From Phyllobates terribilis (lineage: Eukaryota), in the NCBI RefSeq assembly GCF_046119375.1, contig NW_027362765.1, positions 174,344,001 through 174,408,000 on the forward strand: a stretch of 64,000 nt of DNA, read 5' to 3'. Positions 13,134-28,440 of this stretch are shown one piece after another. Below the pieces are notes generated by a model. That model saw only the letters and a program-made list of their open reading frames with translations. It was not told where the DNA came from and ran no database searches. The translations under genes and the position numbers were made by a program. Positions within the stretch are counted from its first letter, which is position 1, and each line of letters opens with the position of its first letter.

Positions 13134-13196
13134 ATGACTGCCACTGCTGCAGTGAGTCCCAGTGAGTACCTGCAACCTGCTGTCTCCGCTGCTCAG
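13134..13196 (+). CDS. sp2: Sp2 coding exon (N-terminus MTATAAVSPSEYLQPAVSAAQ)
   Basis: Matches the SP2 N-terminal MAATAAVSPSDYLQPAASTTQ; acceptor tag|13128, donor cag|gtaagt, phase 0. Not in the ORF track because it is short. Confidence 0.9.
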
Positions 13197-13668: not shown

Positions 13669-15263
13669 CAGTGGCTACGGAAAGTATTCAGACCCCTTTA
13701 AATTTTTCACTCTTTGTTTCATTGCAGCCATTTGGTAAATTCTAAAAAGTTCATTTTTTTTCTTATTAAAGTACACTCTGCACCCCATCTTGACTGAAAA
13801 AAACAGAAATATAGAAATGTTTGCAAATTTATTAAAAAAGAAAAACTGAAATATCACATGGTCATAAGTATTCAGACCCTTTGCTCAGGCACTCATATTT
13901 AAGTCACATGCTGCCCATTTCCCTGTGATCCTCCTTGAGATGGTTCTACTCCTTCATTGAAATCCAGCTGTGTTTAATTAAACTGATAGGACTTGATTTG
14001 GAAAGGCACACACCTGTCTATATAAGACCTCACAGCTCACAGTGCATCTCACACCAAATGAGAATCATGAGCTGAAAAGGAACTGCCCAAGGAGCTCAGA
14101 GACAGAATTGTGGCAAGGCACAGATCTGGCCAAGGTTACAAAAGAATTTATGCATTACTCAAGGCTCCTAAGAGCACAGTGCACTCCATAATCCTTTAAA
14201 TAGATGAAGTTTGGACCACCAGAAGTCTTCCTAGACCTGGCTGTCCAACCAAACCGAGCAATCGTGGGAGAAGAGCCTTGGTGAGAGAGGTAAAGAAGAA
14301 CCCCAAGATCACTGTGGCTGAGCTCCAAAGATGCAGTAGGGAGATGGGAGAAAGTTCCACAAAGTCAACTATCACTGCAGCCCTCTATCAGTCGGGTCTG
14401 TATGGCAGAGTGGCCCGATGGAAGCCTTTCCTCAGCGCAAGACATATGAAAGCCCACTTGGCGTTTGCTCAAAAACACATGAAGGACTCCCAGACTATGA
14501 GAAATAAGATTCTCTGGTCTGATGAGACGAACATAGAACTTTTTGGTGATAATTCTAAGCGGTATGTGTGGAGAAAACCAGGCACTGCTCATCACCTGCC
14601 CAATACAATCCCAACAGTGAAACATAGTGGTGGCAGCATTATGCTATGGGGTGTTTTTCAGCTGCAGGGACAGGACGACTGGTTGCAATTGAAGGAAACA
14701 TGAATGCGGCCAAGTACAGAGGTATCCTGGATGAAAACCTTCCAGAGTGCTCTGGACCTCAGACTTGGCCGAAGGTTCACCTTCCAACAAGACAATGACC
14801 CTAAGCACACAGCTAAAATAACAAAGGCGTGGCTTCAGAATTGACCATTCTTGATTGACCAACCAGAGCCCTGACCTAAACCCAATTGAGCATCTCTGGA
14901 GAGACCTGAAAATGGCTGTACACCAACGTTCACCATCCAACCTGATGGAACTGGAGAGGATCTGCAAGGAAGAATGGCAGAGGATCCCCAAATCCAGGTG
15001 TGAAAAACTTGTTGCATCATTCTCAAGAAGACTCATGGCTATACTAGCTCAAAAGGGTCTGAATACTTATGACCATGTGATATTTCAGTTTTTCTTTTTT
15101 AATAAATTTGCAAAAATGTCTACATTTCTGTATTTTTCAGTCAAGATGGGGTGCAGAGTGTACTTTAATGAGAAAAAAAAAGAACTTTTTAGAATTTACC
15201 AAATGGCTGCAATGAAACAGCGTGAAAAATTTAAAGGGGTCTGAATACTTTCCGTACCCACTG
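13669..15263 (+). mobile_element. Tc1 element (DD34E type), degenerate, in the sp2 intron before the large exon
   Basis: TA|cagtggctacggaaagtattcagacc ... tccgtacccactg|TA; ~200-bp TIRs; frameshifted transposase (WSDE, NPIE). Confidence 0.93.
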
Positions 15264-16149: not shown

Positions 16150-16785
16150 TTAAAGGGGTTGTGCCACCATAAAGAATACATTTAACCAAGCAGAAAAGGA
16201 GTAAATAAATGTTTTTGTAATTTACAGTTATTAAAAATTCAAAAAATACCAAGCTTTTATCTTTTGTAGTATGCCCTCTGACGTTATGCTACCTCACAGA
16301 TTTGACAGTGCAGGGAGCGTATTGCTGAAAGTCTTCCCACCCCCCCTTACTCCCCTGACCTCTGGGTGAGATCGTTCGGCTTCATAGAGCTGTGTGTGTG
16401 AGCACGGGAAGCCTCTCTCTGCAATTGCACTCACACAGGTCTGTGGTGATCTCACCCGGGAGGGGGGGGGTCACTGACATGTATCCATGCTTCCTCAGCA
16501 ATATGCTCCCTGCACTGTCAGACTTGTGAGGGAGAATACGTTGTGCCCACTGGGGGTGGGGAGTTGGGGGAACCTCTTATGTTGACAGGAACTGTGCAAA
16601 CTGGCCAGCTGATTGGCCACTGGGAGGACGGAATGGAATAACGCCAGGGAGCATACTTCAGAAGATAAAAGCTTGGTATTTTTTGAATGGAGCATATTTT
16701 TTAATAACTGTAAATTGCAAAAACATTTATTTCCACCTTTTCTGCTTGGTTAAATGTATTCTTTATAGTGGCACAACCCCTTTAA
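16150..16785. mobile_element. TTAA-type (Kolobok/T2-like) MITE
   Basis: TTAAaggggttgtgccac ... gtggcacaacccctTTAA, with TIRs of about 110 bp. Confidence 0.8.
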
Positions 16786-17691
16786 TACATCACAGTACCC
16801 TGCTGGCCTTAGAAGCCACGGATTGACTTTTCATACTGTTATTTAGTCTGTGGTCTACAAGTACACCCTGATCCTTCTATACAAGTGACTCTCCTAGTTT
16901 TACTACACTAGAACATATGGCGCTCGAATGTTATTAGTGCCCATGTGCATAACTTTAAAGAGAACCTGTCACTAGGTTTTTCTCATATAACGTATGGCCA
17001 CCACCATTAGGGCCCTTTTAACAGCATACTGGAATGCTGTAAAAAAAAAAAATTAAATAAAAAAAATAATCCCCAATATAGTCTGCAGATCCCAAAAAAT
17101 ATTGCATTATACGTTACCACCTGTTTTGGACACTGTCTGTTTCTCTCATGCTTATAGTGCTGTACATAGTCCCTTACAGGCGCCTTGAACGGCTTTTCCA
17201 CAATGCATTAACCAGCTTACTGGGCTATAATTACCTGGGAAAGACCTGAAAATGGGCACCACATAGGTTTTGAGCCATTTGCTTGGTACAATATCATATC
17301 AAAAATTATGCATAGGGGCCCAGCAGGACTGAGCAATATTTGTAGTATGATATAATGAAGGGTATTTCCTTGGGGCAGTATATGGAAGTAAGGACTTTCT
17401 GTGACTCCGTACTCCAAAGCTATAAGCATTCTATGTACCACCATATTAATCATGTATACTCAGCTAGAGTCTAGGGGAAAATATCTCTAGAACATATGAC
17501 TTTTTTATAATATGTAAGAACCTGACATAAAGGTCTTGAATAAAATCTGTGGCATAGGCAGTGGAGGTGTGCTTTATATAACTCGGGCTGCAGAGTGTAG
17601 TGTATTGGCATACATGAGCCTGTCAGGGTTGTTCTTGTGTCCTGTCTCTTTACCATGTAACAAGGCATCTGTGTTTTATTCACCCATCTAG

Positions 17692-18555
17692 GACACACAG
17701 CCTTCTCCTCTGGCTCTCCTGGCAGCCACATGCAGTAAAATTGGTCCTCCTGCTATTGAAACAGCTGTGACTACCCCTGTACCACAACGACCAAGTCGCA
17801 AAAGGTTGATACCTATAAAGCCTGCACCATTACCAGTGAGTCCCGGAAAAACAAGTATAGGACTTTTAAATGCCAAAGGGAATGTGATCCAAATTCCACA
17901 ATTGGGGACAGGAAACGGGCAGCTCTTCTTCACCATACAGAACCCAGGGGGTAAGGCCGGACGCTATCAAGCTTTGCAGACTTCTCCTCAGGCAGTTCCA
18001 CAGACTCTGGGCACTCAGTTTCAGATTATTAGTCCTAATGATGGTGGCACGACCCTTCAGCTTACTCCACACTCCAGTTCTACAAAACATGTGCCCATAA
18101 AGCCTGCCCCTCCACAGAAAAACAGCAGTGTTATGAAGTTGACTGGAACTGCTGGCAACAACCTCACTTTGGCACTGCCTCTCAATAATCTGGCAGACAG
18201 CTCATCTGAAATCTGCAGTCAACTTGTTCATAGCAGGCAGAGTAAAAAGCCTCGTAAGAAGCCCCTGCCACCAGGGCCGACACCTGGCTCTCCCACCCAG
18301 GAGCAGGTGGAGACTGTAGTCATTGAAACAACTGCAGACAATATCCTCCAAGCTGGAAACAACCTGCTGATTGTCCAGAGCCCCAATGCAGGTCAGCATG
18401 CTGTATTACAGCTTGTACAGCCCAAAGCGGAGACACAGCTGGTGCAAATACCACAACAGGCACTGAGAGTGGTACAAGCAGCCTCCGCTACACTGCCAAC
18501 AGTGCCACAAAAGCCAGTACAAACTGTCCAGAGCACAGAAGCTTTTCCCACACAG
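17692..18555 (+). CDS. sp2: Sp2 large exon: Sp box and Gln-rich region (288 codons)
   Basis: DTQPSPLALLAATCSKIGPP (Sp box), PIKPAP motifs and EQVETVVIETTADNILQAGNNLLIVQSP; ag|17692 and cag|gtatga; phase 0/0. Confidence 0.97.
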
Positions 18556-18694
18556 GTATGAAGGCATTTTCTCATGTTTAATTCATGTATGATTTTCTGT
18601 GACTTTGTACCAACAAGCTCGTGGAAGTAAGGTGGCATTGCAAGATTTCAACATTAATTTAGTTGATATTTAAAGGCATTGTCCATCCCTGGCT

Positions 18695-19465
18695 TTAGAG
18701 AGGTTGTCCAGTACTTTAGCATTGATGACCTATCCTTAGGATAGGTCATCAATGAATGATCGGCCGGGGTCCGACACCCGGCATTCCCAACGATCAGCTG
18801 TTATCGGCGACGGCCACTGGTCGGAAGTCAGAACGAGGTTTTCATAAACTTGTATTGAAAAGTGACCTCCGTGCAGCTCCATGAAACACTGGAGGTGCGG
18901 GTTAGGTCACTTTTCGCCAGAGACTGATGTCGAAAACGGATGAAAACGCCAGAAGGCGAGTATGAGACAGGGGGCAAGGGACTTACATTTAAAGCACCAC
19001 TTCAGCAGTGCAATAAAAAAAAAGCACTGGAACTGCTCCATCTTCTGATAGTGGCGACGGCAGGGTACTGCACATCTGCCTTCTATTGATTTGAACAGCC
19101 CAAAGCGGAGACACAGCTGGTGCAAATACCACAACAGGCACTGAGAGTGGTACAAGCAGCCTCAGCTACACTGCCAACAGTGCCACAAAAGCCAGTACAA
19201 ACTGTCCAGAGCACAGAAGCTTTTCCCACACAGGTATGAAGGCATTTTCTCATGTTTAATTCATGTATGCTTTTCTGTGACTTTGTACCAACAAGCTCGT
19301 GGAATATATAGTACCCTTTCAGAAGATGTGCAGCTCCGCAAGTGAGTATTTCTGGTCGACACCGATAACAGCTGATCAGCGGTGGTGCTGGGAGTCGAAC
19401 CCCGATCGATCAGACATTGGTGACCTATAGGTCATCAATACTAAAGTACTTGGCAACCTCTTGAA
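18695..19465. mobile_element. Composite TTAA-type MITE carrying a fragment of another MITE and a copy of sp2 exon sequence
   Basis: TIRs agaggttgtccagtactttagcattgatgacctat / ataggtcatcaatactaaagtacttggcaacctct. 18822-19040 matches the MITE at 23659-24034; 19095-19304 duplicates 18417-18626. Confidence 0.8.
19095..19304 (+). repeat. 210-bp duplicate of the sp2 large-exon 3' end with its splice donor
   Basis: Identical to 18417-18626 (offset 678) except for two substitutions seen (TCC>TCA; atgatt>atgctt). Confidence 0.95.
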
Positions 19466-20516
19466 TTTAAAAAAAATGTCCCAGAATCCTGAAAAATAAA
19501 AAAGAAAGATAAAGTCTCAAATTACCCATCCCTCATTGTTTCTCTTGCAGAACTTCTCTGGCCCCCATCTGTCTTTGTGCTTCCTTTTCTGGCTGAACAG
19601 GCATAAGACCACTGTAGCCAAAAGCTGGCCACATCGTTGACCGTGCCAGTAAATGGTTGTAGCGGTCATGTGTTGTTTTTGTCAGAATAGTATGTACTGG
19701 GACTCACAGGGCAACCGGGTGGTGCTGGAAAGGGAACAATGGGATCAGTTAGTTGAGTAAATATTATTTTTTTATTTTCAGCATTTAGTGCTATTTAAAG
19801 GACAACTGATACCAGAAAAACGCTATTAACTTGCAGATGTGGGGTTAATCTGCAGGTTAATAGTGACATTAACCTGCCTGGTGGCTGCACTTAGCCAATC
19901 TCTGCTGGGAGAAAATGAACTTTATTTCCCCGGCAGCGCTAGGCTTTCAGTCATGGGGGGGCGGTGCCAGCGTTGGTTCAGTGATCTCTCTGGGTATACA
20001 GAGCGATGGCTATAACCGCGCGCCCAGCCCTGACTGACCCTCGCTCTGCCAGTCAGAGCCGGGGATGCGGTTACAGCTGCTTCTCTGTATACTCGTAGCT
20101 GTGACTGACCCGGCCCTGCCCTTATGACTAGAAGCCGACTTCTGCTGGGAGGAATTTAAATTTAAAGCAAAACTGAAAGAAATGAACTGGAATATAAGTT
20201 AGTGTGCATGCAACGTGTAGGCGCATGTTCACACTGGCGGCTAAACAGAGGAAAACTAAGATAAAAACAAAATGAGCAAATACCCTGCAGTAAGTAAATA
20301 AATAGCAATAGTGCATGAAAACAATATAGGGTACTTCGTTAACATTGTCTTGATCAAAAAAACTTAAAAGCCATCCCACCACGTCACGGTGACCCTATAT
20401 GGGACAGTCCTAATCTATAGTATTAAAACCTTGCTATATGTCATTACATAAATATGAATAAGGGCCTAGCAGGACCGAAGTCCCGACTATTGAACACCCA
20501 GCATTGGGGAGATATA

Positions 20517-22149
20517 CAGTGGGTACGGAAAGTATTCAGACCCCTTTAAATTTTTCACTCTTTGTTTCATTGCAGCCATTTGCTAAACTCTAAAAAGTTC
20601 ATGTTTATCTCATTAAAGTACACTCTGCACCCCATGTTGACTGAAAAAAAAACAGAAATGTAGAAATGTTTGCAAATTTATTTAAAAAGAAAAACTGAAA
20701 TATCACATGGTCATAAGTATTCAGACCCTTTGCTCAGACACTCATATTTAAGTCACATGCTGTCCATTTCCTTGTGATCCTCCTTGAGATGGTTCTACTC
20801 CTTCATTGGAGTCCAGCTGTGTTTAATTAAACTGATAGGACTTGATTTGGAAAGGCACACACCTGTCTATATAAGACCTCACAGCTCACAGTGCATGTCA
20901 GACCAAATGAGAATCATGAGCTCAAAGGAACTGCCCAAGGAGCTCAGAGACAGAATTGTGGCAAGGCACAGATCTGGCCAAGGTTATAATAGAATTTCTG
21001 CATTACTCAAGGTTCCTAAGAGCACAGTGGCCTCCATAATCCTTATATGGAAGAAGCTTGGGGCCACCAGAAGTCTTCCTAGGCCTTGGCGTCCAGCCAA
21101 ACTGAGCAATCGTGGGAAAAGGGCCTTGGTGAGAGAGGTAAAGAAGAACCCCAAGATCACTGTGGCTGAGCTTCAGAGATGCAGTAGGGAGATGGGAGAA
21201 AGTTCCACAAAGTCAACTATCACTGCAGCCCTCCACCAGTCGGGCCTTTATGGCACACTGGCCCAACGGAGACCTCTTCTCAGTGCAAGACATATGAAAG
21301 CCCGCATAGAGTTTGCTCAAAAACACATGAAGGACTCCCAGACTATGAGAAATAAGATTCTCTGGTCTGATGAGACGAACATAGAACTTTTTGGTGATAA
21401 TTCTAAGCGGTATGTGTGGAGAAAACCAGGCACTGCTCATCACCTGCCCAATACAATCCCAACAGTGAAACATGGTGGAGGCAGGATCATGCTATGGGGG
21501 TGTTTTTCAGCTGCAGGGGAAGGAAGACTGGTTGCAATTGAAGGAAACATGAATGCAGTCAGTACAGAGATATCCTGGATGAGAACCTCTTCCAGAGTGC
21601 TCTAGACCTCAGACTTGGCCGAAGGTTCACCTTCCAACAAGACAATGACCCTATGCACACAGCTAAAATAACAAAGGAGTGGCTTCAGAACAACTCTGAC
21701 CATTCTTGACTGGCCCAGCCAGAGCCCTGACCTAAACCCAATTGAGCATCTCTGGAGAGACCTGAAAATGGCTGTCCACCAACGTTCACCATCCAACCTG
21801 ACGGAACTAGAGAGGATCTGCAAGGAAGAATGGCAGAGGATCCCCAAATCCAGGTGTGAAAAACTTGTTGCATCATTCCCAAGAAGACTCATGGCTATAC
21901 TAGCTCAAAAGGGTGCTTCTACTCAATACTGAGAAAAGGTTCTGAATACTTATCACCATGTGATATTTCAGTTTTTCTTTTTTAAATAAATTTGCAAAAA
22001 TTTCTACATTTCTGTTTTTTTTCAGTCAAGATGGGGTGCAGCGTGTACTTTAATGAGAAAAAAATGAACTTTTTAGAATTTACCAAACGGCTGCAATGAA
22101 ACAAAGAGTAAAAAATTTAAAGGGCTCTGAATACTTTCTGTACCCACTG
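20517..22149 (+). mobile_element. Tc1 element, same family as 13669-15263, in the sp2 intron after the large exon
   Basis: TA|cagtgggtacggaaagtattcagacc ... tacccactg|TA. Transposase starts MSSKELPKELRDRIV at 20916, with frameshifts near 21560 and 21695. Confidence 0.95.
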
Positions 22150-23658
22150 TACAAGGGTAATGTCCAGCTCAAAGAAAAGGGAAGCCAAGCCCTTACTTGC
22201 ACTGACTGACTCTGGCTCTGCATTAGGGCCGGCTGACAGTCAGGGGCGCGGTTACGCCTGCTGCTCTCTATACTCAGAGCGGTGACTGAACCCGCGCTAC
22301 CCCATGACTGGAAGTCAAACGCTGCCGGGGGAATAAAGTAAATTTTCTCCATTAGCATTTGGCTAATTGCTGGTGCTGGGCAGCATAATAACACTATTAA
22401 CCTGCAGATTAACCTCATATCTGTAGGTTAATAGCGTTTTTTTCTGTTTACGGGTTCCCTTTAAAAAAATTTATGGGAAGACGAGCTCTGTTTTAATTTT
22501 TTTTAGATGACCTAATAACAATAAGCAAAGGTAATTAGATACTCTGCACTCTAAAATGCGTGATGTATATTTTATTAAGGCAATGCAACAAAAGCAGGGA
22601 CGTTTTGGGACTTAGAAAAGGGCCTTCAGATTGTTATTGTGATGTTAAGACTTCTGAAAGCAGCGCTATGGAGGCGCAACACTAAGCTGTGTAGTGAAAG
22701 CAAAGGGGCGCTATTGCCGCCTCTGACCAACCTTTTTGGCTCCTGATTTGAAAAAGAGTTGTTTAGCGTTTGTCCCGCTCATGTGATTAGATTTGTGACT
22801 CTTTTACCAGAAAGGTAACTAACCACATAGAGAAGAATTTATCATGGCTATCGAAACAATACACCATTCTTGAACCCAACGCTTGCTTGAATAGGGAGCA
22901 CCAAATTTATTAATAGGTTAAGTTTAAGTGACAATGTACACTATTTTGCTTCTGTTCATTAGGCCACAGCCCCACTATCAGTATTTAGTCAAGTCTACTA
23001 TGTGGGGCAGTGCTTTCTCCATTTAAGGTCACGGCCCACTATCAGTATTCCCCACTATCCGTATTTGGTCAGTATTCGATCAGTATTTTTTCCCAGGAGT
23101 GGGAGCCAAAACCAGGTGAGGAGGAACAATCAGAGAAAAGGTATAATAGAAACAAGTCACCAATTCTGCATTTATCACCCACTCCTGGTTTTGGCTCCCA
23201 CTCCTGAGAAAAAATACTGACCCAATACTGATAGTGGGGCCTTGGCCTTTATAGTGAATTTGTTGCTTGGTGGTTGACTGTTACCTTTTGCTAAGTGTCA
23301 GGACCAACACAAAAGGGAAATAAGTTGAAATTGTTTTGCACAAAGACTCAAATTTTGCAACGTTTTGGCATAGAGGGAATGATAAAGCACTGTAACAATC
23401 AGCACCTCATAACGTGATCACAGGCGAGCTATGGCTGACTGCAGAAACTGTGGTTTAGTTGAATAGAATCTGACAGCACGATTTTGTGATGTAAAGACGT
23501 GACAGTAATAATGATTATATTGATACCTTTGGTGAAGAAATCCGCTTTGGGATTCTTCTTTAATCACCATTTGAAGTTTTCTGCTAGTTAGATTTCAGTG
23601 CACTGTGTCTTCTCCTCCCTGTCTGTGATACTCTGCCACTCCGCCTGCCCCCTTTATT

Positions 23659-24034
23659 TTAAAGCACCACTCCAGCATTTGTTGGTTTTTTTTCAGCGCT
23701 GGAGTGGCGCTTTAAATCTAAGTCCCCTGCGCCTGTCATATACTCACCCTCCGGCGTCTTCACAGTTTTTTTGTGCCGCTCCGGAAGTCAGAAGCTACGT
23801 TACAAAAGCGCAATGCAAGTCTATGAGAGACAGAACGAGGCTTTCAGAAACTTGTATTGAAAAGTGACCTCTGTGCAGCTCCATGAAACACTGGAGCTGC
23901 GGGGTAGGTCACTTTTCGCCAGAGACTGATGGCGAAAACAGATGAAAACGCCAGAAGGCGAGTATGAGACAGGGCTTACATTTAAAGCACCACTCCATCG
24001 GTGCAATAAAAAAAATATTGGAGTGGTGCTTTAA
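23659..24034. mobile_element. TTAA-type MITE
   Basis: TTAAagcaccactcca ... tggagtggtgctTTAA. Confidence 0.8.
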
Positions 24035-24494
24035 GAGGAGATTTCAAACAGAGGAGGCAGGTCACTGAAAAAGAAGTGACCTGTCATTCACAGACCGGAG
24101 GGGCTGGGAATCGCAGGGAGGAGAAGACCCAGTGCACAGTTCGGCCCCTGTGCACCGAAATATGATTAACAGAAAACTTCAAATGCTGATTACAGAAAAA
24201 CAACAAAGCAGATTACTTCAATTTCATTTGTATTACTGCACCATTACAGCCATGTCTTTACATTACAAAATCGTGCTGACAGGTTCTCTTTGAGTCCCCA
24301 TTTTTGTACATTTGATTCTGCTAGTGGTCTAATGCCTGTCAACATAATGGTCAACACAAGAAATGCTACTTTTTTCCCATTAAGCAGTGTCCTATTATGT
24401 AAGATAAACAAAAACTTTGCACATTTGGGATCCTCACATCTGCAACAACCCATCTGAATCTAACGCTAACTGAATAGAGGTGGGATCTGCATCT

Positions 24495-24945
24495 AAGGCT
24501 ATGTTCACACATCCAGTAGCAATCCATTGACAAAAAAAGTTGTGCAGACACAACTTTTTTGTCCCGTTGAAAAAAAATGATTTCAACTGGATCCTGTTTT
24601 TTAACATTGAAGTCTATGGAATAGAGATCCATTAAACAGCCATCCGTTTTGCTCCCATTTGAAAAGAATCAGTTTTTTGCTTACTGGATCAGTTTCATAT
24701 GAACCATTACTTGAAAGTTAATATGTCCACTAGTACCATATATGATAAATATTTATTTTTACATCTCCAGTAAGCAAAAACAGGTCCTTTTCAAATGAGA
24801 TAACAATGGAAGGCTATATAACGGATCCGTTTTCCATACACTTCAATGTTAAAAAAACGGATCCAGTTGAAATCAGTTTTTTTCAAGCAGACAAAAAACT
24901 GATCCAACAGCAAAGGATGATTACTGGACATGTGAACATAGCCTA
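24495..24945. mobile_element. Harbinger-like MITE; related TWA-flanked MITEs near 25091-25300, 39968-40643, 46393-46763, 47850-48240, 51675-51998 and 55635-56540
   Basis: taaGGCTATGTTCACA ... TGTGAACATAGCCtag TIRs with a palindromic interior. Confidence 0.7.
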
Positions 24946-25830
24946 GTAGACATTATAGACATTTCATCAATGCCTGAGATAAGAATTCCCCTTTGTCTCC
25001 CAGACCTTACCTCATCTAGAATTGTACTCCCTTGCAAAGCACAGGCTGTCATTTCTTTACCTAGGGGAGGGCTGTTTGTTTGGTTACTCATAAGGGTGCT
25101 TTCACATTGTGTTTCTGCTCCCGTTCGGTACACTCCCGAAAATGATGCACGTCACAGCACATGTTCACTCTGCCGTCACCATTACAGTCTGTGGCCCTGT
25201 CCGTGCATACGTCCGAACCCCGTTTTGCTGGGGATTCAGACGTGAACTCTGATAGGGGACACCGAACGGGTGCAGAAACGCAATGTGAAAGTACCCTTAG
25301 GATATGTGCACACAACATCTTTTTCAGGTGCATTCCGTCTGCACTGAAAACCCGCCTCTAGAAATGATCATAGTGCACAGCAATGTAAAAACGACACTGC
25401 TGTGCGTGTTTTTAGTCTTTTAACTGCTTCAGGGTTCAGAAACGCAGTTAAAATAAGCAACCTGTTTATTCTTATCTATTATAATGTAAAACACAAAGAA
25501 AAGATTCCGCCAGCAACATCTCCTCAGGAAAAATACCGCTCGTAGTTTCCTGAAACGGCTTTGCCTAGAGAACCTCGGCAGCTCCGCCGGTGGAACAGAG
25601 ATGTCGTGTGCACATAGCCTCAAGCTGGGATCATGCATGCAGTTTGTGCTGCAGATTTTAGCCAAAGGTAAAAATTGTTCCAGAAGGAAAGAGAAGAAGT
25701 CTCCTTTTTATATTTTCAGGGTTTGCTTTAACCCAATTCTGGTTTTGACTCAAAAAAACTGGCAGAAATTGCACTTGTAGTCAACCCGCATCCAAAGCTT
25801 TGGGGTTCTATGGTAAGTTCATGTCTTTAT

Positions 25831-26498
25831 CAGGGCTGTGGAGTCGGCATAAAATGGACCGACTACAACTCCTAGAATATATAATAAATTGGGTACAGTA
25901 GTTCAATGCAGTTTGTGGGGAATATTTTTTCATAAGAATTTGGGAAAGTTATGAAATGTCCTATAAATGTCTGTCCTATTCCTGATCTAAGGGTCTAGAC
26001 TTTTAGCTGAGATGAATCTGTGCTACTGTACAATTATCACTTAAAGGGGTATTCCTATCTCCAAGATCCTATCCCAATATGTAGTAGGTGTAGTAATGAT
26101 AATAATATTAGCAAATACCTCCAATTAGAAATGTAGTATAGTTTTTCTGATTTGCTACGTCGCTTTCCTCACGTGCAGGCATTGTAGGACCTTAGGAATC
26201 CATGGTTATGACCACTGATACAGTGACCGTTAGTTAGCTAGTTCCTAGTGGTCGTAGCCATGGATACTTAAGGTTCTGCAATGCCCTGCACATGAGGAAA
26301 GAGACGTAGCGAAACAGAAAAACTATACTACATTTCTAATTGGAGATATTTGCTAATATTATTATTATTACACCTACTACATATTGGGATAGGATCTTGG
26401 AGATGGGAATACCCCTTTAAGCATGAGCCATGTATGAGGGAGTCGGTGGCATGGAAATTGAGGAGTCGGAGGTTTGGCTTACCGACTCCACAGCCCTG
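25831..26498. mobile_element. hAT-like MITE containing a nested TTAA MITE (26041-26420; second copy of the latter at 44294-44644)
   Basis: TIRs cagggctgtggagtcgg / ccgactccacagccctg; the nested element runs TTAAaggggtattcc ... ggaataccccTTTAA. Confidence 0.75.
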
Positions 26499-27517
26499 GA
26501 ACTTACTATAATACTTTAATTACAATTTGACTTTGATTTCATAATGAAGTTCTTCTTCGTTTTTTTCGAGAGGGGCCCAGAATCCCCTTCCCTCCCGTGT
26601 CAGCATGTGATAAATAGTGTTGGATATCAGGCACAAATAATTGTAATAATCTAAGCCAGTTTCTCTGCATGTGTTGGAGAAGAGGGCTGGCCTTGCTAGT
26701 GAGCTAGCCTGATAGCCAGCCCCCACATGCTGCTCTCTGAGGGATGGTAGGAGGCGCCTGACATCAGTGCTAATTTAAGTTGTATATTAGTAAGATCAAT
26801 TATTTTCTACTTGCAAAACATCCCCATAACTTTCATGTCTCCAGACATCTCCTTTAACAAATATTGATTCTACTGGATTGTCTCCAAACATGCCATTCTG
26901 TATACAGGACTGTAAAATCCCTGCCACCTTGCAGCCAGTGTACATAGAAATCCCAGGGTTTTTTGTTTTATTAATGTTCAACATGTTCTGCATATTTAAA
27001 TGGTAAACCAATTATAATCTCCTACTAGTGTTCCTTAAAGAAAAATTTGGTGTAGAGGACCTGTCATCACGTCTAAAGTAGCCAGTTTTTGCTCTCATAT
27101 TATTCCCGCTGTTCCCCTGAGTGTTCCGTTTTTCTATTTTGTTTTTAAATCCACCATACGGTTCCAGAGATATGCCCCCTTTACATAGTACTAAGTTTTA
27201 TGTTCTTTACAAGTGGGAGGTGCTCACAGGAAATACTGCAGAGTAGCTTAGACACCCCCAGAGAACCCTGTAAGCCACTCCCCTTTGTAAAGACCATAAC
27301 AATTGACACTGAATAAAAAGGCCTATATCTCTGCAACCATAGGGTGGATTTTAAGAAAAACACAAACCGATGTACTCGAGGAGACAGTGGGAATAGAATA
27401 AGAACAAACACTGAACACTTTTGACCTGCTGACAGGTCCTCTTTAAATGAGGGTCAAGTCCCTATTTTTTGCCTTGTGTGATTTCTACAGTTTTTTGTAA
27501 ACTTCTTTCTTTTACAG

Positions 27518-27803
27518 ATCTACTTTCGTACTTCAGCAGGAGATGTCCAAGCAGTGATGTTGCAGGAGTCTGCTCCTCAGCCATGCACCATGGGAGGCAC
27601 AGGTTCATTATCAACACTATCTGTTACTCCCACTAAGAAGAATGTTAATCGCAAAGAGCGGTCCTTAGCCAAAATTGCCCCAGCAGGGAGCGTCATTAAC
27701 CTGAATACAGCACAGCTTTCAGCCACTGCCCAAGGCATCCAGACTATCAGTATTAATGGCGTCCCAGTGCAAGGAGTACCTGTTACCATCACCAATGCTG
27801 CAG
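27518..27803 (+). CDS. sp2: Sp2 coding exon
   Basis: IYFRTSAGDVQAV...RKERSLAKIAPAGSVINLN...QGVPVTITNAA; tttacag|, gcag|gtgtat; phase 0/1. Confidence 0.95.
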
Positions 27804-27949: not shown

Positions 27950-28124
27950 GGCAGCAGCAAATCAGTGTGCAGAACGTGTCCAGTAATAACGTTGCCATCA
28001 GTGGCCTCAGCCCTTCCCAGATACAGCTACAGATGGAACAGGCCTTGTCTGGGGATCTACAGCCAGGAGAGAAGAGGAGGAGGGTGGCCTGTACTTGTCC
28101 AAACTGCAAGGACGGGGAGAAGGG
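27950..28124 (+). CDS. sp2: Sp2 coding exon with the buttonhead box
   Basis: GQQQISVQNVSSNN...GEKRRRVACTCPNCKDGEK; phase 1/2. Confidence 0.96.
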
Positions 28125-28246
28125 GTGAGAGTGTTCACTAAGTGCAGATGAAGTTGTGTGAGGCTAGTTAAATAAGGGGCACGGGTGGGAAGGGGTTGAC
28201 GGAGGGATTATTGTGCTGAGGAGAGACACTCTCTCCCTCTCAGCAG

Positions 28247-28440
28247 GTGGGGCCCCCCTGGCAGGAAGAGGCACGTGTGTCACATCCCTGAATGCGGGAG
28301 AACGTTTCGCAAGACTTCACTCTTGAGAGCCCACGTTCGGCTGCACACCGGGGAGAGGCCATTCGTGTGCAACTGGGGATTCTGTACAAAAAGGTTCACC
28401 CGCAGCGATGAGCTGCAAAGGCACGCACGCACTCACACAG
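28247..28440 (+). CDS. sp2: Sp2 coding exon, C2H2 fingers 1-2
   Basis: [23 protein letters not shown] (the SP2-diagnostic TSLLRAH) and [23 protein letters not shown]; alternative acceptor at 28244; donor cag|gtgtgt. Confidence 0.96.

What the first reader, a model, noticed from the sequence alone, without database searches (positions are those of the whole stretch)
18695..19465. A MITE has captured the end of the neighbouring sp2 exon and may form a new in-frame cassette exon
Seen in sequence: a MITE begins about 70 bp after the duplicated source segment (18417-18626). Between its TIRs lie a fragment of a different MITE family (as at 23659-24034, with a deletion between two cagaa microhomologies) and a 210-bp copy of the sp2 exon end with its gtatga donor. 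The junction with MITE sequence reads ccttctattgatttgaacag|CCC, a possible acceptor. That defines a 135-nt phase 0/0 exon at 19099-19233 encoding PKAETQLVQ...EAFPTQ (45 aa), and the only coding change is silent. Inference: local template-switch or gap-repair capture, analogous to Pack-MULEs. Inclusion would duplicate 45 aa of the Gln-rich region. Use of the copy instead of the large exon would give a short Sp2 lacking the Sp box.
Basis: partly seen in the sequence, partly recalled or inferred. Interest (0 to 1): 0.72.

Follow-up and report, generated by a model that had tools for sequence, protein, structure and literature searches.

The report
Exon-end copy pasted into a frog MITE
A 210-base copy of the end of an sp2 exon, with its splice donor, was pasted a few million years ago into the tip of an old hairpin transposon 0.7 kb downstream in the same intron of the golden poison frog; this kind of local capture is already known in animals, and nothing yet shows that the copy is used as an exon.

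Summary
Window 19095-19304 copies 18417-18626 (the last 139 nt of the large sp2 exon plus 71 nt of intron) with 208/210 identity. One change is a silent TCC>TCA and the other is intronic. The copy lies at the apex of a roughly 770-nt hairpin-forming MITE (18697-19463) that also carries a truncated element of a second family. Contigs of public runs show the right junction at single-copy depth and the 210-mer at about twice unique depth, and two other samples show traces of the left junction, so this is not an assembly artefact. The genome is Phyllobates terribilis (exon 100% identical to RefSeq Sp2).

The best reading is a single-copy "Pack-TIR" as described for animals by Tan et al. 2021 (PMC8277862). 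A break or stalled fork at the hairpin tip was repaired by copying a nearby template, long after the MITE had inserted. Transposition was not involved, and the 210-mer has only two copies.

The cassette-exon idea holds on paper: phase 0/0, 45 codons, a donor identical to the real one and a weak but plausible acceptor. It has no support from transcripts. All three RefSeq Sp2 isoforms join 18555 directly to 27518, and the read tool left sp2 mRNA contigs out, so junctions could not be counted. This is a new member of a known kind, of modest interest. This scan has noted other host pieces inside hairpin MITEs of this genome.

The parts
13134..13196 (+). sp2 first coding exon (MTATAAVS...AAQ), donor at 13196
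   Evidence: tblastn 100% to RefSeq Sp2 residues 1-21
17692..18555 (+). large sp2 exon, 288 codons, carries the Sp box (SPLALLAATCSKIG) and the Gln-rich region; phase 0 at both ends
   Evidence: (288/288 identical to P. terribilis Sp2 XP_073539597)
18417..18626 (+). source segment: last 139 nt of the exon plus the first 71 nt of the intron, including donor CAG|GTATGA
18697..18815 (+). left arm of the outer MITE; palindromic core 18721-18753 is present at about 10^4 copies in the genome
   Evidence: (depth about 1.6e5 against 14.7 for unique sequence)
18816..19037 (+). nested, 5'-truncated element of a second repeat family (about 90% to 23828-24015), with an internal deletion between two CAGAA; boundaries are +/-10 nt
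19038..19094 (+). central part of the outer MITE left of the insertion; supplies the polypyrimidine stretch and, possibly with the source, the AG of the would-be acceptor
   Evidence: (family joints 18805>19038, 19081>19360)
19095..19304 (+). captured copy of the sp2 exon end plus intron start, 208/210 identical to the source
   Evidence: (210-nt contig at depth 27, contig 19275-19845 across the right junction, X6 contig 18958-19108 across the left one)
19099..19233 (+). hypothetical 135-nt phase 0/0 cassette exon (45 codons); use not shown
   Evidence: absent from RefSeq isoforms
19305..19463 (+). right half of the outer MITE: mirror image of the left arm plus about 50 nt of the central region; core has a 9-nt deletion
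23659..24034 (+). full-length copy of the second family (25-nt TIRs), itself nested in another inverted-repeat element at 23533-24220; reference for the fragment at 18816-19037
27518..27803 (+). next sp2 exon (IYFRTSAGD...), phase-0 acceptor; the authentic partner of donor 18555

Best explanation
This is a single-copy Pack-TIR. An old, immobile MITE that folds into a long hairpin sat in the intron 142 nt downstream of the large sp2 exon of Phyllobates terribilis. Much later a double-strand break or a stalled replication fork arose at or near the hairpin tip. The free 3' end switched to a template 0.47-0.68 kb upstream (sister chromatid or the replicated strand), copied 210 nt (exon end plus intron start) in direct orientation, and switched back. 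This left a templated insertion between 19094 and 19305. Short microhomologies are possible at both joints: ACAG or TTG.A on the left, and A or GAA on the right. The event did not need transposase, and the composite has not moved or multiplied. Because the copied piece kept the reading frame and the authentic donor, and landed behind a pyrimidine-rich MITE stretch ending in AG, it looks like an in-frame exon. Most likely it is an intronic pseudo-exon that is spliced out with the intron, or included only at trace level. Shown: the duplicate, its position, its copy number, the junctions in reads, the hairpin, and the relative ages. Inferred: the break, the template switches, and the lack of exon use.
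For: Identity 208/210 and exact boundaries. Only two places in the window hold the segment.

In run X1 the unique flanks have depth 14.7-15.6 and the collapsed 210-nt contig has 27, so there are two copies per haplotype and no further copies. Contigs stop or start exactly 30 nt inside the duplicate (18446, 18597, 19275), as a k=31 graph does at a repeat. Contig 19275-19845 carries the right junction at depth 15.6, which points to a homozygous copy.

In another individual (X9) contigs break at 18417/18446. In X6 a 151-nt contig, 18958-19108, matches with no mismatch across the left joint.

The element folds as a hairpin: DNA MFE -163 kcal/mol against -99.6 +/- 4.7 for shuffles, z -13.5. In the RNA fold 134 pairs enclose the copy, the innermost being 19077-19324. 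The right half is collinear in mirror image with the left arm plus the family's central sequence.

Age contrast: the arms are about 76% alike, whereas the copy is 99% like its source.

The profile matches the published class: single copy, parent closer than 5 kb, microhomology, internal breakpoints, and capture after insertion (PMC8277862).

RefSeq Sp2 isoforms X1 (561 aa), X2 (560) and X3 (463) all read ...EAFPTQ|IYFRTS. No +45-aa isoform or short isoform was among the best 120 hits to that region.
Against: The pre-insertion sequence of this MITE copy is unknown, so the microhomologies and the statement that no MITE sequence was lost are inferences. No family consensus or empty-site allele could be fetched.

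Family joints are heterogeneous. One variant joins 19081 to 19360 through 13 nt. So the ancestral copy may have been less symmetric than assumed, and the apex position is then less exact.

Evidence from the second individual (X9) covers the left boundary only, and its contig runs through the right boundary of the source without a break.

Absence from RefSeq models and from contigs does not exclude low-level or tissue-specific inclusion. The rough acceptor score (2.1) lies within the range of the gene's real acceptors, 0.9-8.4. sp2 mRNA contigs were missing from the laid RNA-like runs, apparently removed by the tool's filter.
Confidence: 0.75

Rival explanations
1. The copy is a working alternative cassette exon. 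Donor 18555 splices to 19099 and 19233 to 27518, which adds a second copy of 45 residues of the Gln-rich region to Sp2. Alternatively 13196>19099 gives a short Sp2 without the Sp box.
For: Phase 0/0, 135 nt, no stop, and a donor identical over 71 nt of downstream intron. The acceptor is in the top 5% of 900 intronic AGs by a rough matrix and scores better than the real exon-4 acceptor. The first 120 nt of the intron, part of which was copied, remain weakly alignable (66%) with a distant hyloid frog, which may reflect splicing signals.
Against: None of the three RefSeq isoforms of this species has it, and no isoform of matching length appears in the protein collection. Purines at -4 to -6 and C at +1 weaken the acceptor. 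The predicted stem reaches to 19077, about 20 nt before the AG, and covers the region where a branch point would lie. With only two substitutions, one of them silent, there is no power to show selection.
Confidence: 0.12
2. Transposition-linked capture in the manner of Pack-MULEs. The MITE picked up the flanking piece during excision and abortive gap repair, and the composite is or was a mobile Pack-MITE.
For: The source lies only 70 nt from the element's end, as filler DNA often does in abortive gap repair of Ac/Ds and P elements (established knowledge; discussed in PMC8277862).
Against: There are only two copies of the 210-mer in the genome by depth. The breakpoints are at the centre of the element and not near its ends, and little or no MITE sequence was lost. 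The MITE copy is old and degenerate, with arms about 76% alike, a 9-nt deletion in one core and no recognisable target-site duplication, so it was probably immobile when a 99%-identical copy arose.
Confidence: 0.08
3. Assembly artefact: a spurious duplication created when repeat-rich long reads were assembled.
For: Large, repeat-rich frog genomes are hard to assemble (PMC12208295, abstract seen). The best DNA holder may be the same sample as the assembly.
Against: The junction k-mers exist in read-derived contigs, the 210-mer has about twice the unique depth, and traces of the left junction occur in samples from two other studies.
Confidence: 0.03
4. Two separate, truncated MITE copies inserted head to head, with the duplicate lying between them and not inside one element.
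For: The right half mirrors the left arm plus the central region, whereas one family variant seen in reads joins the central region directly to a short right arm.
Against: It needs two independent insertions and two truncations ending exactly at the two ends of a young 210-nt insert. A single long-hairpin element with an apical break is simpler.
Confidence: 0.06

Closest known systems
Single-copy Pack-TIRs of animals (Tan et al. 2021, Nat Commun 12:4280, PMC8277862)
   Same: A host fragment flanked by the two parts of one TIR element. It is single copy, the parent lies on the same chromosome within 5 kb, microhomology at the breakpoints is possible, the breakpoints are internal to the element, and the capture came long after insertion. 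The proposed origin is transposition-independent gap filling at a fragile site. Frogs (Xenopus tropicalis, 25 cases) are among the richer genomes.
   Different: The parent lies only 70 nt from the capturing element. The paper's pipeline discarded parents with a TE within 100 bp, so cases like this were not counted. The captured piece is an exon end with its donor, placed in the same intron and orientation as its source, which creates an in-frame pseudo-exon. The transcribed cases in the paper were retained introns and UTR extensions. The recipient here is an unclassified long-hairpin MITE of a dendrobatid frog.
Pack-MULEs of plants
   Same: Gene fragments sit between terminal inverted repeats of a non-autonomous DNA transposon.
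   Different: Pack-MULEs have Mutator-type TIRs and 9-10-bp target duplications, usually capture unlinked genes, and are often mobilised and amplified. None of this is seen here.
Filler DNA / abortive gap repair and MMBIR/FoSTeS template switching
   Same: A nearby sequence is copied in direct orientation into a break, with short microhomology at the switches. Hairpin-forming inverted repeats are known break and stall sites (established knowledge; PMC2621351 was listed but not read).
   Different: These are mechanisms, not families. A single clean 210-nt insert is longer than typical polymerase-theta inserts and simpler than typical MMBIR rearrangements.
Exon duplication as a source of alternative exons; exonisation of transposon sequence (for example Alu)
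   Same: An intronic duplicate of exon sequence in frame, and an acceptor supplied at least partly by transposon sequence.
   Different: Only the 3' part of an exon was duplicated, and no transcript shows its use.

Membership tests
MITE | Terminal inverted repeats | tested here: met
   18699-18733 against 19427-19461 is 91% complementary, and the arms extend to about 118 nt at about 76%.
MITE | Small, non-coding, high copy number | tested here: met
   About 300 nt once the two inserts are removed. No ORF of 60 aa or more of its own. Core depth is about 1.6e5 against 14.7 for unique sequence, so about 10^4 copies.
MITE | Target-site duplication that names the superfamily | tested here: inconclusive
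   The flanks ...CTGGCTTT and AATTTAAA... share no clear direct repeat at any plausible end (TTA against TGA at best). The superfamily is left open.
Pack-TIR (Tan et al. 2021) | Non-TE host sequence flanked on both sides by parts of one TIR element | tested here: met
Pack-TIR (Tan et al. 2021) | Identifiable parental copy that is not itself part of a TE or a segmental duplication (the paper requires no TE within 100 bp of the parent) | tested here: inconclusive
   The parent is a conserved Sp2 exon end, and only 210 nt are duplicated, so this is not a segmental duplication. However, the capturing MITE lies 70 nt from the parent, so the paper's filter would have removed it.
Pack-TIR, gap-filling (transposition-independent) class | Single copy, parent in cis and close, breakpoints internal | tested here: met
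   The 210-mer is at twice the unique depth. The copies start 678 nt apart. The insert is at the hairpin apex.
Pack-TIR, gap-filling (transposition-independent) class | Microhomology at breakpoints | tested here: inconclusive
   ACAG or TTG.A is possible on the left and A or GAA on the right, but the pre-insertion sequence is unknown.
Pack-TIR, gap-filling (transposition-independent) class | Orthologous TE without the insert in outgroup species | not testable with these tools
A distant hyloid contig (L001) aligns only to about 18676 and shows no MITE.
Pack-MULE | Mutator-like TIRs with a 9-10-bp target duplication | tested here: not met
   No 9-10-bp direct repeat flanks the element. Similarity of the TIRs to Mutator elements was not tested.
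Cassette (alternative) exon | Presence in some mature transcripts with both junctions | tested here: inconclusive
   Absent from RefSeq isoforms X1-X3 and from database hits. The RNA-like runs gave no sp2 mRNA contigs after filtering. Raw-read junction counts were not available.

The most novel reading that the evidence does not exclude
The pseudo-exon is processed after all. It may be included at low or tissue-specific level, giving an Sp2 with a tandem repeat of 45 residues of its Gln-rich region. Alternatively, because long inverted MITE arms flank it as inverted Alus flank circular-RNA exons, it may be back-spliced (19233>19099) into a 135-nt circular RNA. That would make it a very young exon born from repair of a transposon hairpin, seen close to its origin.
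Probability: 0.12. Interest if true: 0.55.

Novelty: new member of a known kind. Interest (0 to 1): 0.3.

Why it matters
This is a clean, datable example from a large poison-frog genome of how hairpin transposons act as break sites that pick up neighbouring DNA. It also shows a blind spot in the published survey, because captures from within 100 bp of the element were filtered out there. Because the copied piece carries a frame-preserving exon end and its donor, it shows how such repair events can lay down raw material for new alternative exons. Its value as a case of exon birth depends on transcript evidence that is still missing. Other first-stage notes on this genome describe host DNA inside hairpin MITEs, so a genome-wide count of such captures may be worth more than this single locus.

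Tried and rejected
**Splice junctions from public runs**
- Only contig-level runs were available. The two RNA-like runs (X5, X6) showed zero depth over the sp2 exon although the index says they hold 0.67 of the words. Their mRNA contigs were evidently left out by the tool's filter, so no junction could be read.

**Orthologous introns**
- The only relative with DNA is a Logan contig at 88% protein identity. It loses alignment about 20 nt before the MITE site.

**Other copies of the MITE family**
- No second copy lies in the 64-kb window.
- An exact-pattern scan of metagenome contigs for the core gave 0 hits.
- A protein search with an open frame through the MITE arm, meant to fish out spurious ORFs on frog contigs, found nothing.
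- A literal sequence search of papers gave one irrelevant hit.
- The family consensus, target-site duplication and superfamily therefore stay open.

**Other checks**
- Rfam found no known RNA family in 17000-25000.
- Simple tandem duplication was rejected: only 210 of the 678 nt between the copy starts are repeated.
- I considered that the right half arose in the same repair event, by copying the left arm. This was rejected because it differs from the left central part by mismatches and a 12-nt gap, so it is much older than the 99%-identical sp2 copy.
Exons were searched by reference only.
- MaxEntScan is not installed.

Full report
**What is there**

The region was read directly and compared with itself. 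Window 19095-19304 repeats 18417-18626 over 210 nt with two differences, 18486C/19164A and 18592A/19270C. No third copy exists in the 64-kb window.

The source is the last 139 nt of a large exon plus the first 71 nt of the following intron. The exon is 17692-18555, which is 288 codons in phase 0 at both ends. It is preceded by a first coding exon at 13134-13196 and followed by an exon starting at 27518.

The exon's translation is 288/288 identical to transcription factor Sp2 of Phyllobates terribilis (XP_073539597) and 92-95% identical to Sp2 of other dendrobatoid frogs. The window is therefore golden poison frog DNA and the gene is sp2.

Within the copy, 19099-19233 is 135 nt, or 45 codons, in the authentic frame. 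The one coding difference is TCC>TCA (Ser), and the donor CAG|GTATGA is unchanged.

**The element around it**

The copy lies inside an inverted-repeat element, 18697-19463.
- The terminal 35 nt of the two ends are 91% complementary, and the arms continue to about 118 nt at about 76%.
- The left arm holds a 33-nt perfect palindrome, 18721-18753. When contigs of whole-genome runs were laid on the region, its summed depth was about 1.6e5 against 14.7 for unique flanks. The family therefore has on the order of 10^4 copies, it is small and it has no coding capacity. This makes it a MITE, although I could not find a target-site duplication or assign a superfamily.
- Between the arms, 18816-19037 is a 5'-truncated member of a second repeat family. 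It is about 90% identical to 23828-24015, inside the full-length copy at 23659-24034.

The right half, 19305-19463, mirrors not just the terminal arm but also about 50 nt of the element's central region. Reads from other family members show that region to follow the left arm (family joint 18805>19038 with 37 nt between).

As single-stranded DNA the whole element folds into one long hairpin. The MFE is -163 kcal/mol against -99.6 +/- 4.7 for shuffles, z -13.5. In an RNA fold 134 base pairs enclose the sp2 copy, the innermost being 19077-19324. The copy therefore sits at the tip of the hairpin.

**Is it real DNA?**

Contigs of four public runs were laid on 16200-20500.
- **X1, the best holder (possibly the assembly's own individual).** Contigs end or start exactly 30 nt inside the duplicate (17071-18446, 18597-18728, 19275-19845). 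This is what a k=31 graph does at a two-copy repeat. The collapsed 210-nt contig has depth 27 against 14.7-15.6 for the flanks. The contig carrying the right junction has full single-copy depth. This argues for two copies per haplotype, a homozygous insert and no further copies elsewhere.
- **X9, an individual from another study.** Contigs break at 18417/18446, the exact left boundary. The right boundary of the source is not broken there, so support from this sample is partial.
- **X6, a third study.** A 151-nt contig, 18958-19108, matches without mismatch from the nested fragment into the first 14 nt of the copy.

An assembly artefact is very unlikely.

**How it most likely arose**

Four features fit the single-copy Pack-TIRs that Tan et al. 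(2021, PMC8277862) catalogued in 100 animal genomes and ascribed to transposition-independent gap filling at fragile sites inside old elements:
- The insert is 99% identical to its source, while the MITE's arms differ by about 24% and one core has a 9-nt deletion. The capture is therefore far younger than the insertion of the MITE.
- The insert is single copy.
- Its parent lies 0.47-0.68 kb upstream in the same orientation.
- The breakpoints are at the centre of the element.

I therefore read the event as follows. A break or fork stall occurred at the hairpin tip. The 3' end switched to the nearby upstream template, 210 nt were synthesised, and the end switched back.

Short microhomologies are possible at both joints (ACAG or TTG.A on the left, A or GAA on the right). 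They cannot be fixed without the pre-insertion sequence.

Two differences in 210 nt suggest an age of a few million years, with a very wide error. This rests on general vertebrate neutral rates of about 1-3e-9 per site per year, taken from my own knowledge and not measured here.

A capture linked to transposition, as in Pack-MULEs, is disfavoured by the copy number, the central breakpoints and the decayed state of the element. The paper's pipeline discarded parents with a TE within 100 bp. A case like this one, with the parent 70 nt from the element, would have been missed.

**Is it an exon?**

On sequence alone it could be. That places it in the top 5% of 900 intronic AGs. The gene's real acceptors score 0.9-8.4. 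The donor and 71 nt of downstream intron are the authentic ones.

Against use:
- There are purines at -4 to -6 and a C at +1.
- The predicted stem ends about 20 nt upstream of the AG.
- All three RefSeq isoforms of this species (561, 560 and 463 aa) join ...EAFPTQ to IYFRTS.
- No isoform 45 residues longer, or short and lacking the Sp box, appeared among the best hits to this part of the protein.

Direct junction counting was not possible. Only contigs were available, and the two RNA-like runs showed no depth on the sp2 exon, apparently because their mRNA contigs were filtered out. What these runs do show is sparse unspliced sequence from the MITE, consistent with pre-mRNA. I put appreciable use as an exon at roughly one in eight.

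**Relatives**

Genomic DNA of other dendrobatids could not be fetched. A Logan contig from a more distant hyloid frog (L001, 88% protein identity) aligns through the exon end and about 120 nt of intron (66% identity). It then loses similarity about 20 nt before the MITE site and shows no MITE-like sequence in its last 170 nt. This is compatible with a later MITE insertion but proves nothing.

**Known or new**

Host fragments inside TIR elements of animals, including frogs, and their origin by local gap filling, are published. This is a new member of that kind. Its particular feature is that the fragment recreates an in-frame exon-like unit in the intron of its own gene.

Other first-stage notes on this genome (for example s1-217979 and s1-230056; not checked by me) describe further host pieces inside hairpin MITEs. 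That fits the idea that such hairpins are recurrent break sites here.

Noticed in passing
window 28244-28247 and 28124-28128: sp2 has a NAGNAG acceptor (cag|cag) that explains RefSeq isoforms X1/X2 (561 and 560 aa). A read-through of the donor at 28124 runs straight into a stop and gives a 463-aa isoform without the zinc fingers. The same 462/463-aa zinc-finger-less isoform is annotated in at least eight other frogs: Dendrobates, two Ranitomeya, Anomaloglossus, Hyla, Eleutherodactylus, Rhinoderma and Leptodactylus.
   Followed up: partly
window 20515-22151 and 14278-15244: Two decayed Tc1/Sleeping-Beauty-type transposon copies lie in sp2 introns. The one at 20515-22151 has 137-nt terminal inverted repeats (93%). 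Its 273-aa ORF matches the Sleeping Beauty HTH and Tc3 transposase domains.
   Followed up: partly
window 23533-24220: A nested pair of inverted-repeat elements. The full-length second-family element (23659-24034, 25-nt TIRs) sits inside another element with arms 23533-23621 and 24114-24220.
   Followed up: no
window 19375-19615: Both RNA-like runs, from two different studies, have multi-read contigs over the right MITE end and about 150 nt of unique intron behind it (depth 3-7, 1-2 mismatches), while neighbouring unique intron has none. The stretch begins with A-rich runs, so internal oligo-dT priming on pre-mRNA is one possibility. This is unexplained.
   Followed up: no
window 19800-19943 and 20232-20375: Two further very high-copy repeats (summed contig depth about 8e4 against 15 for unique sequence). 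Family members join 16971-16975 to 19816, so a related element also ends near 16975.
   Followed up: no
window 18556-18676 and L001:1020-1125: The first 120 nt or so of the intron after the large sp2 exon remain alignable (about 66% identity, with a conserved TTCTGTGACTT block) between P. terribilis and a hyloid frog with 88% Sp2 identity. Similarity then vanishes.
   Followed up: partly
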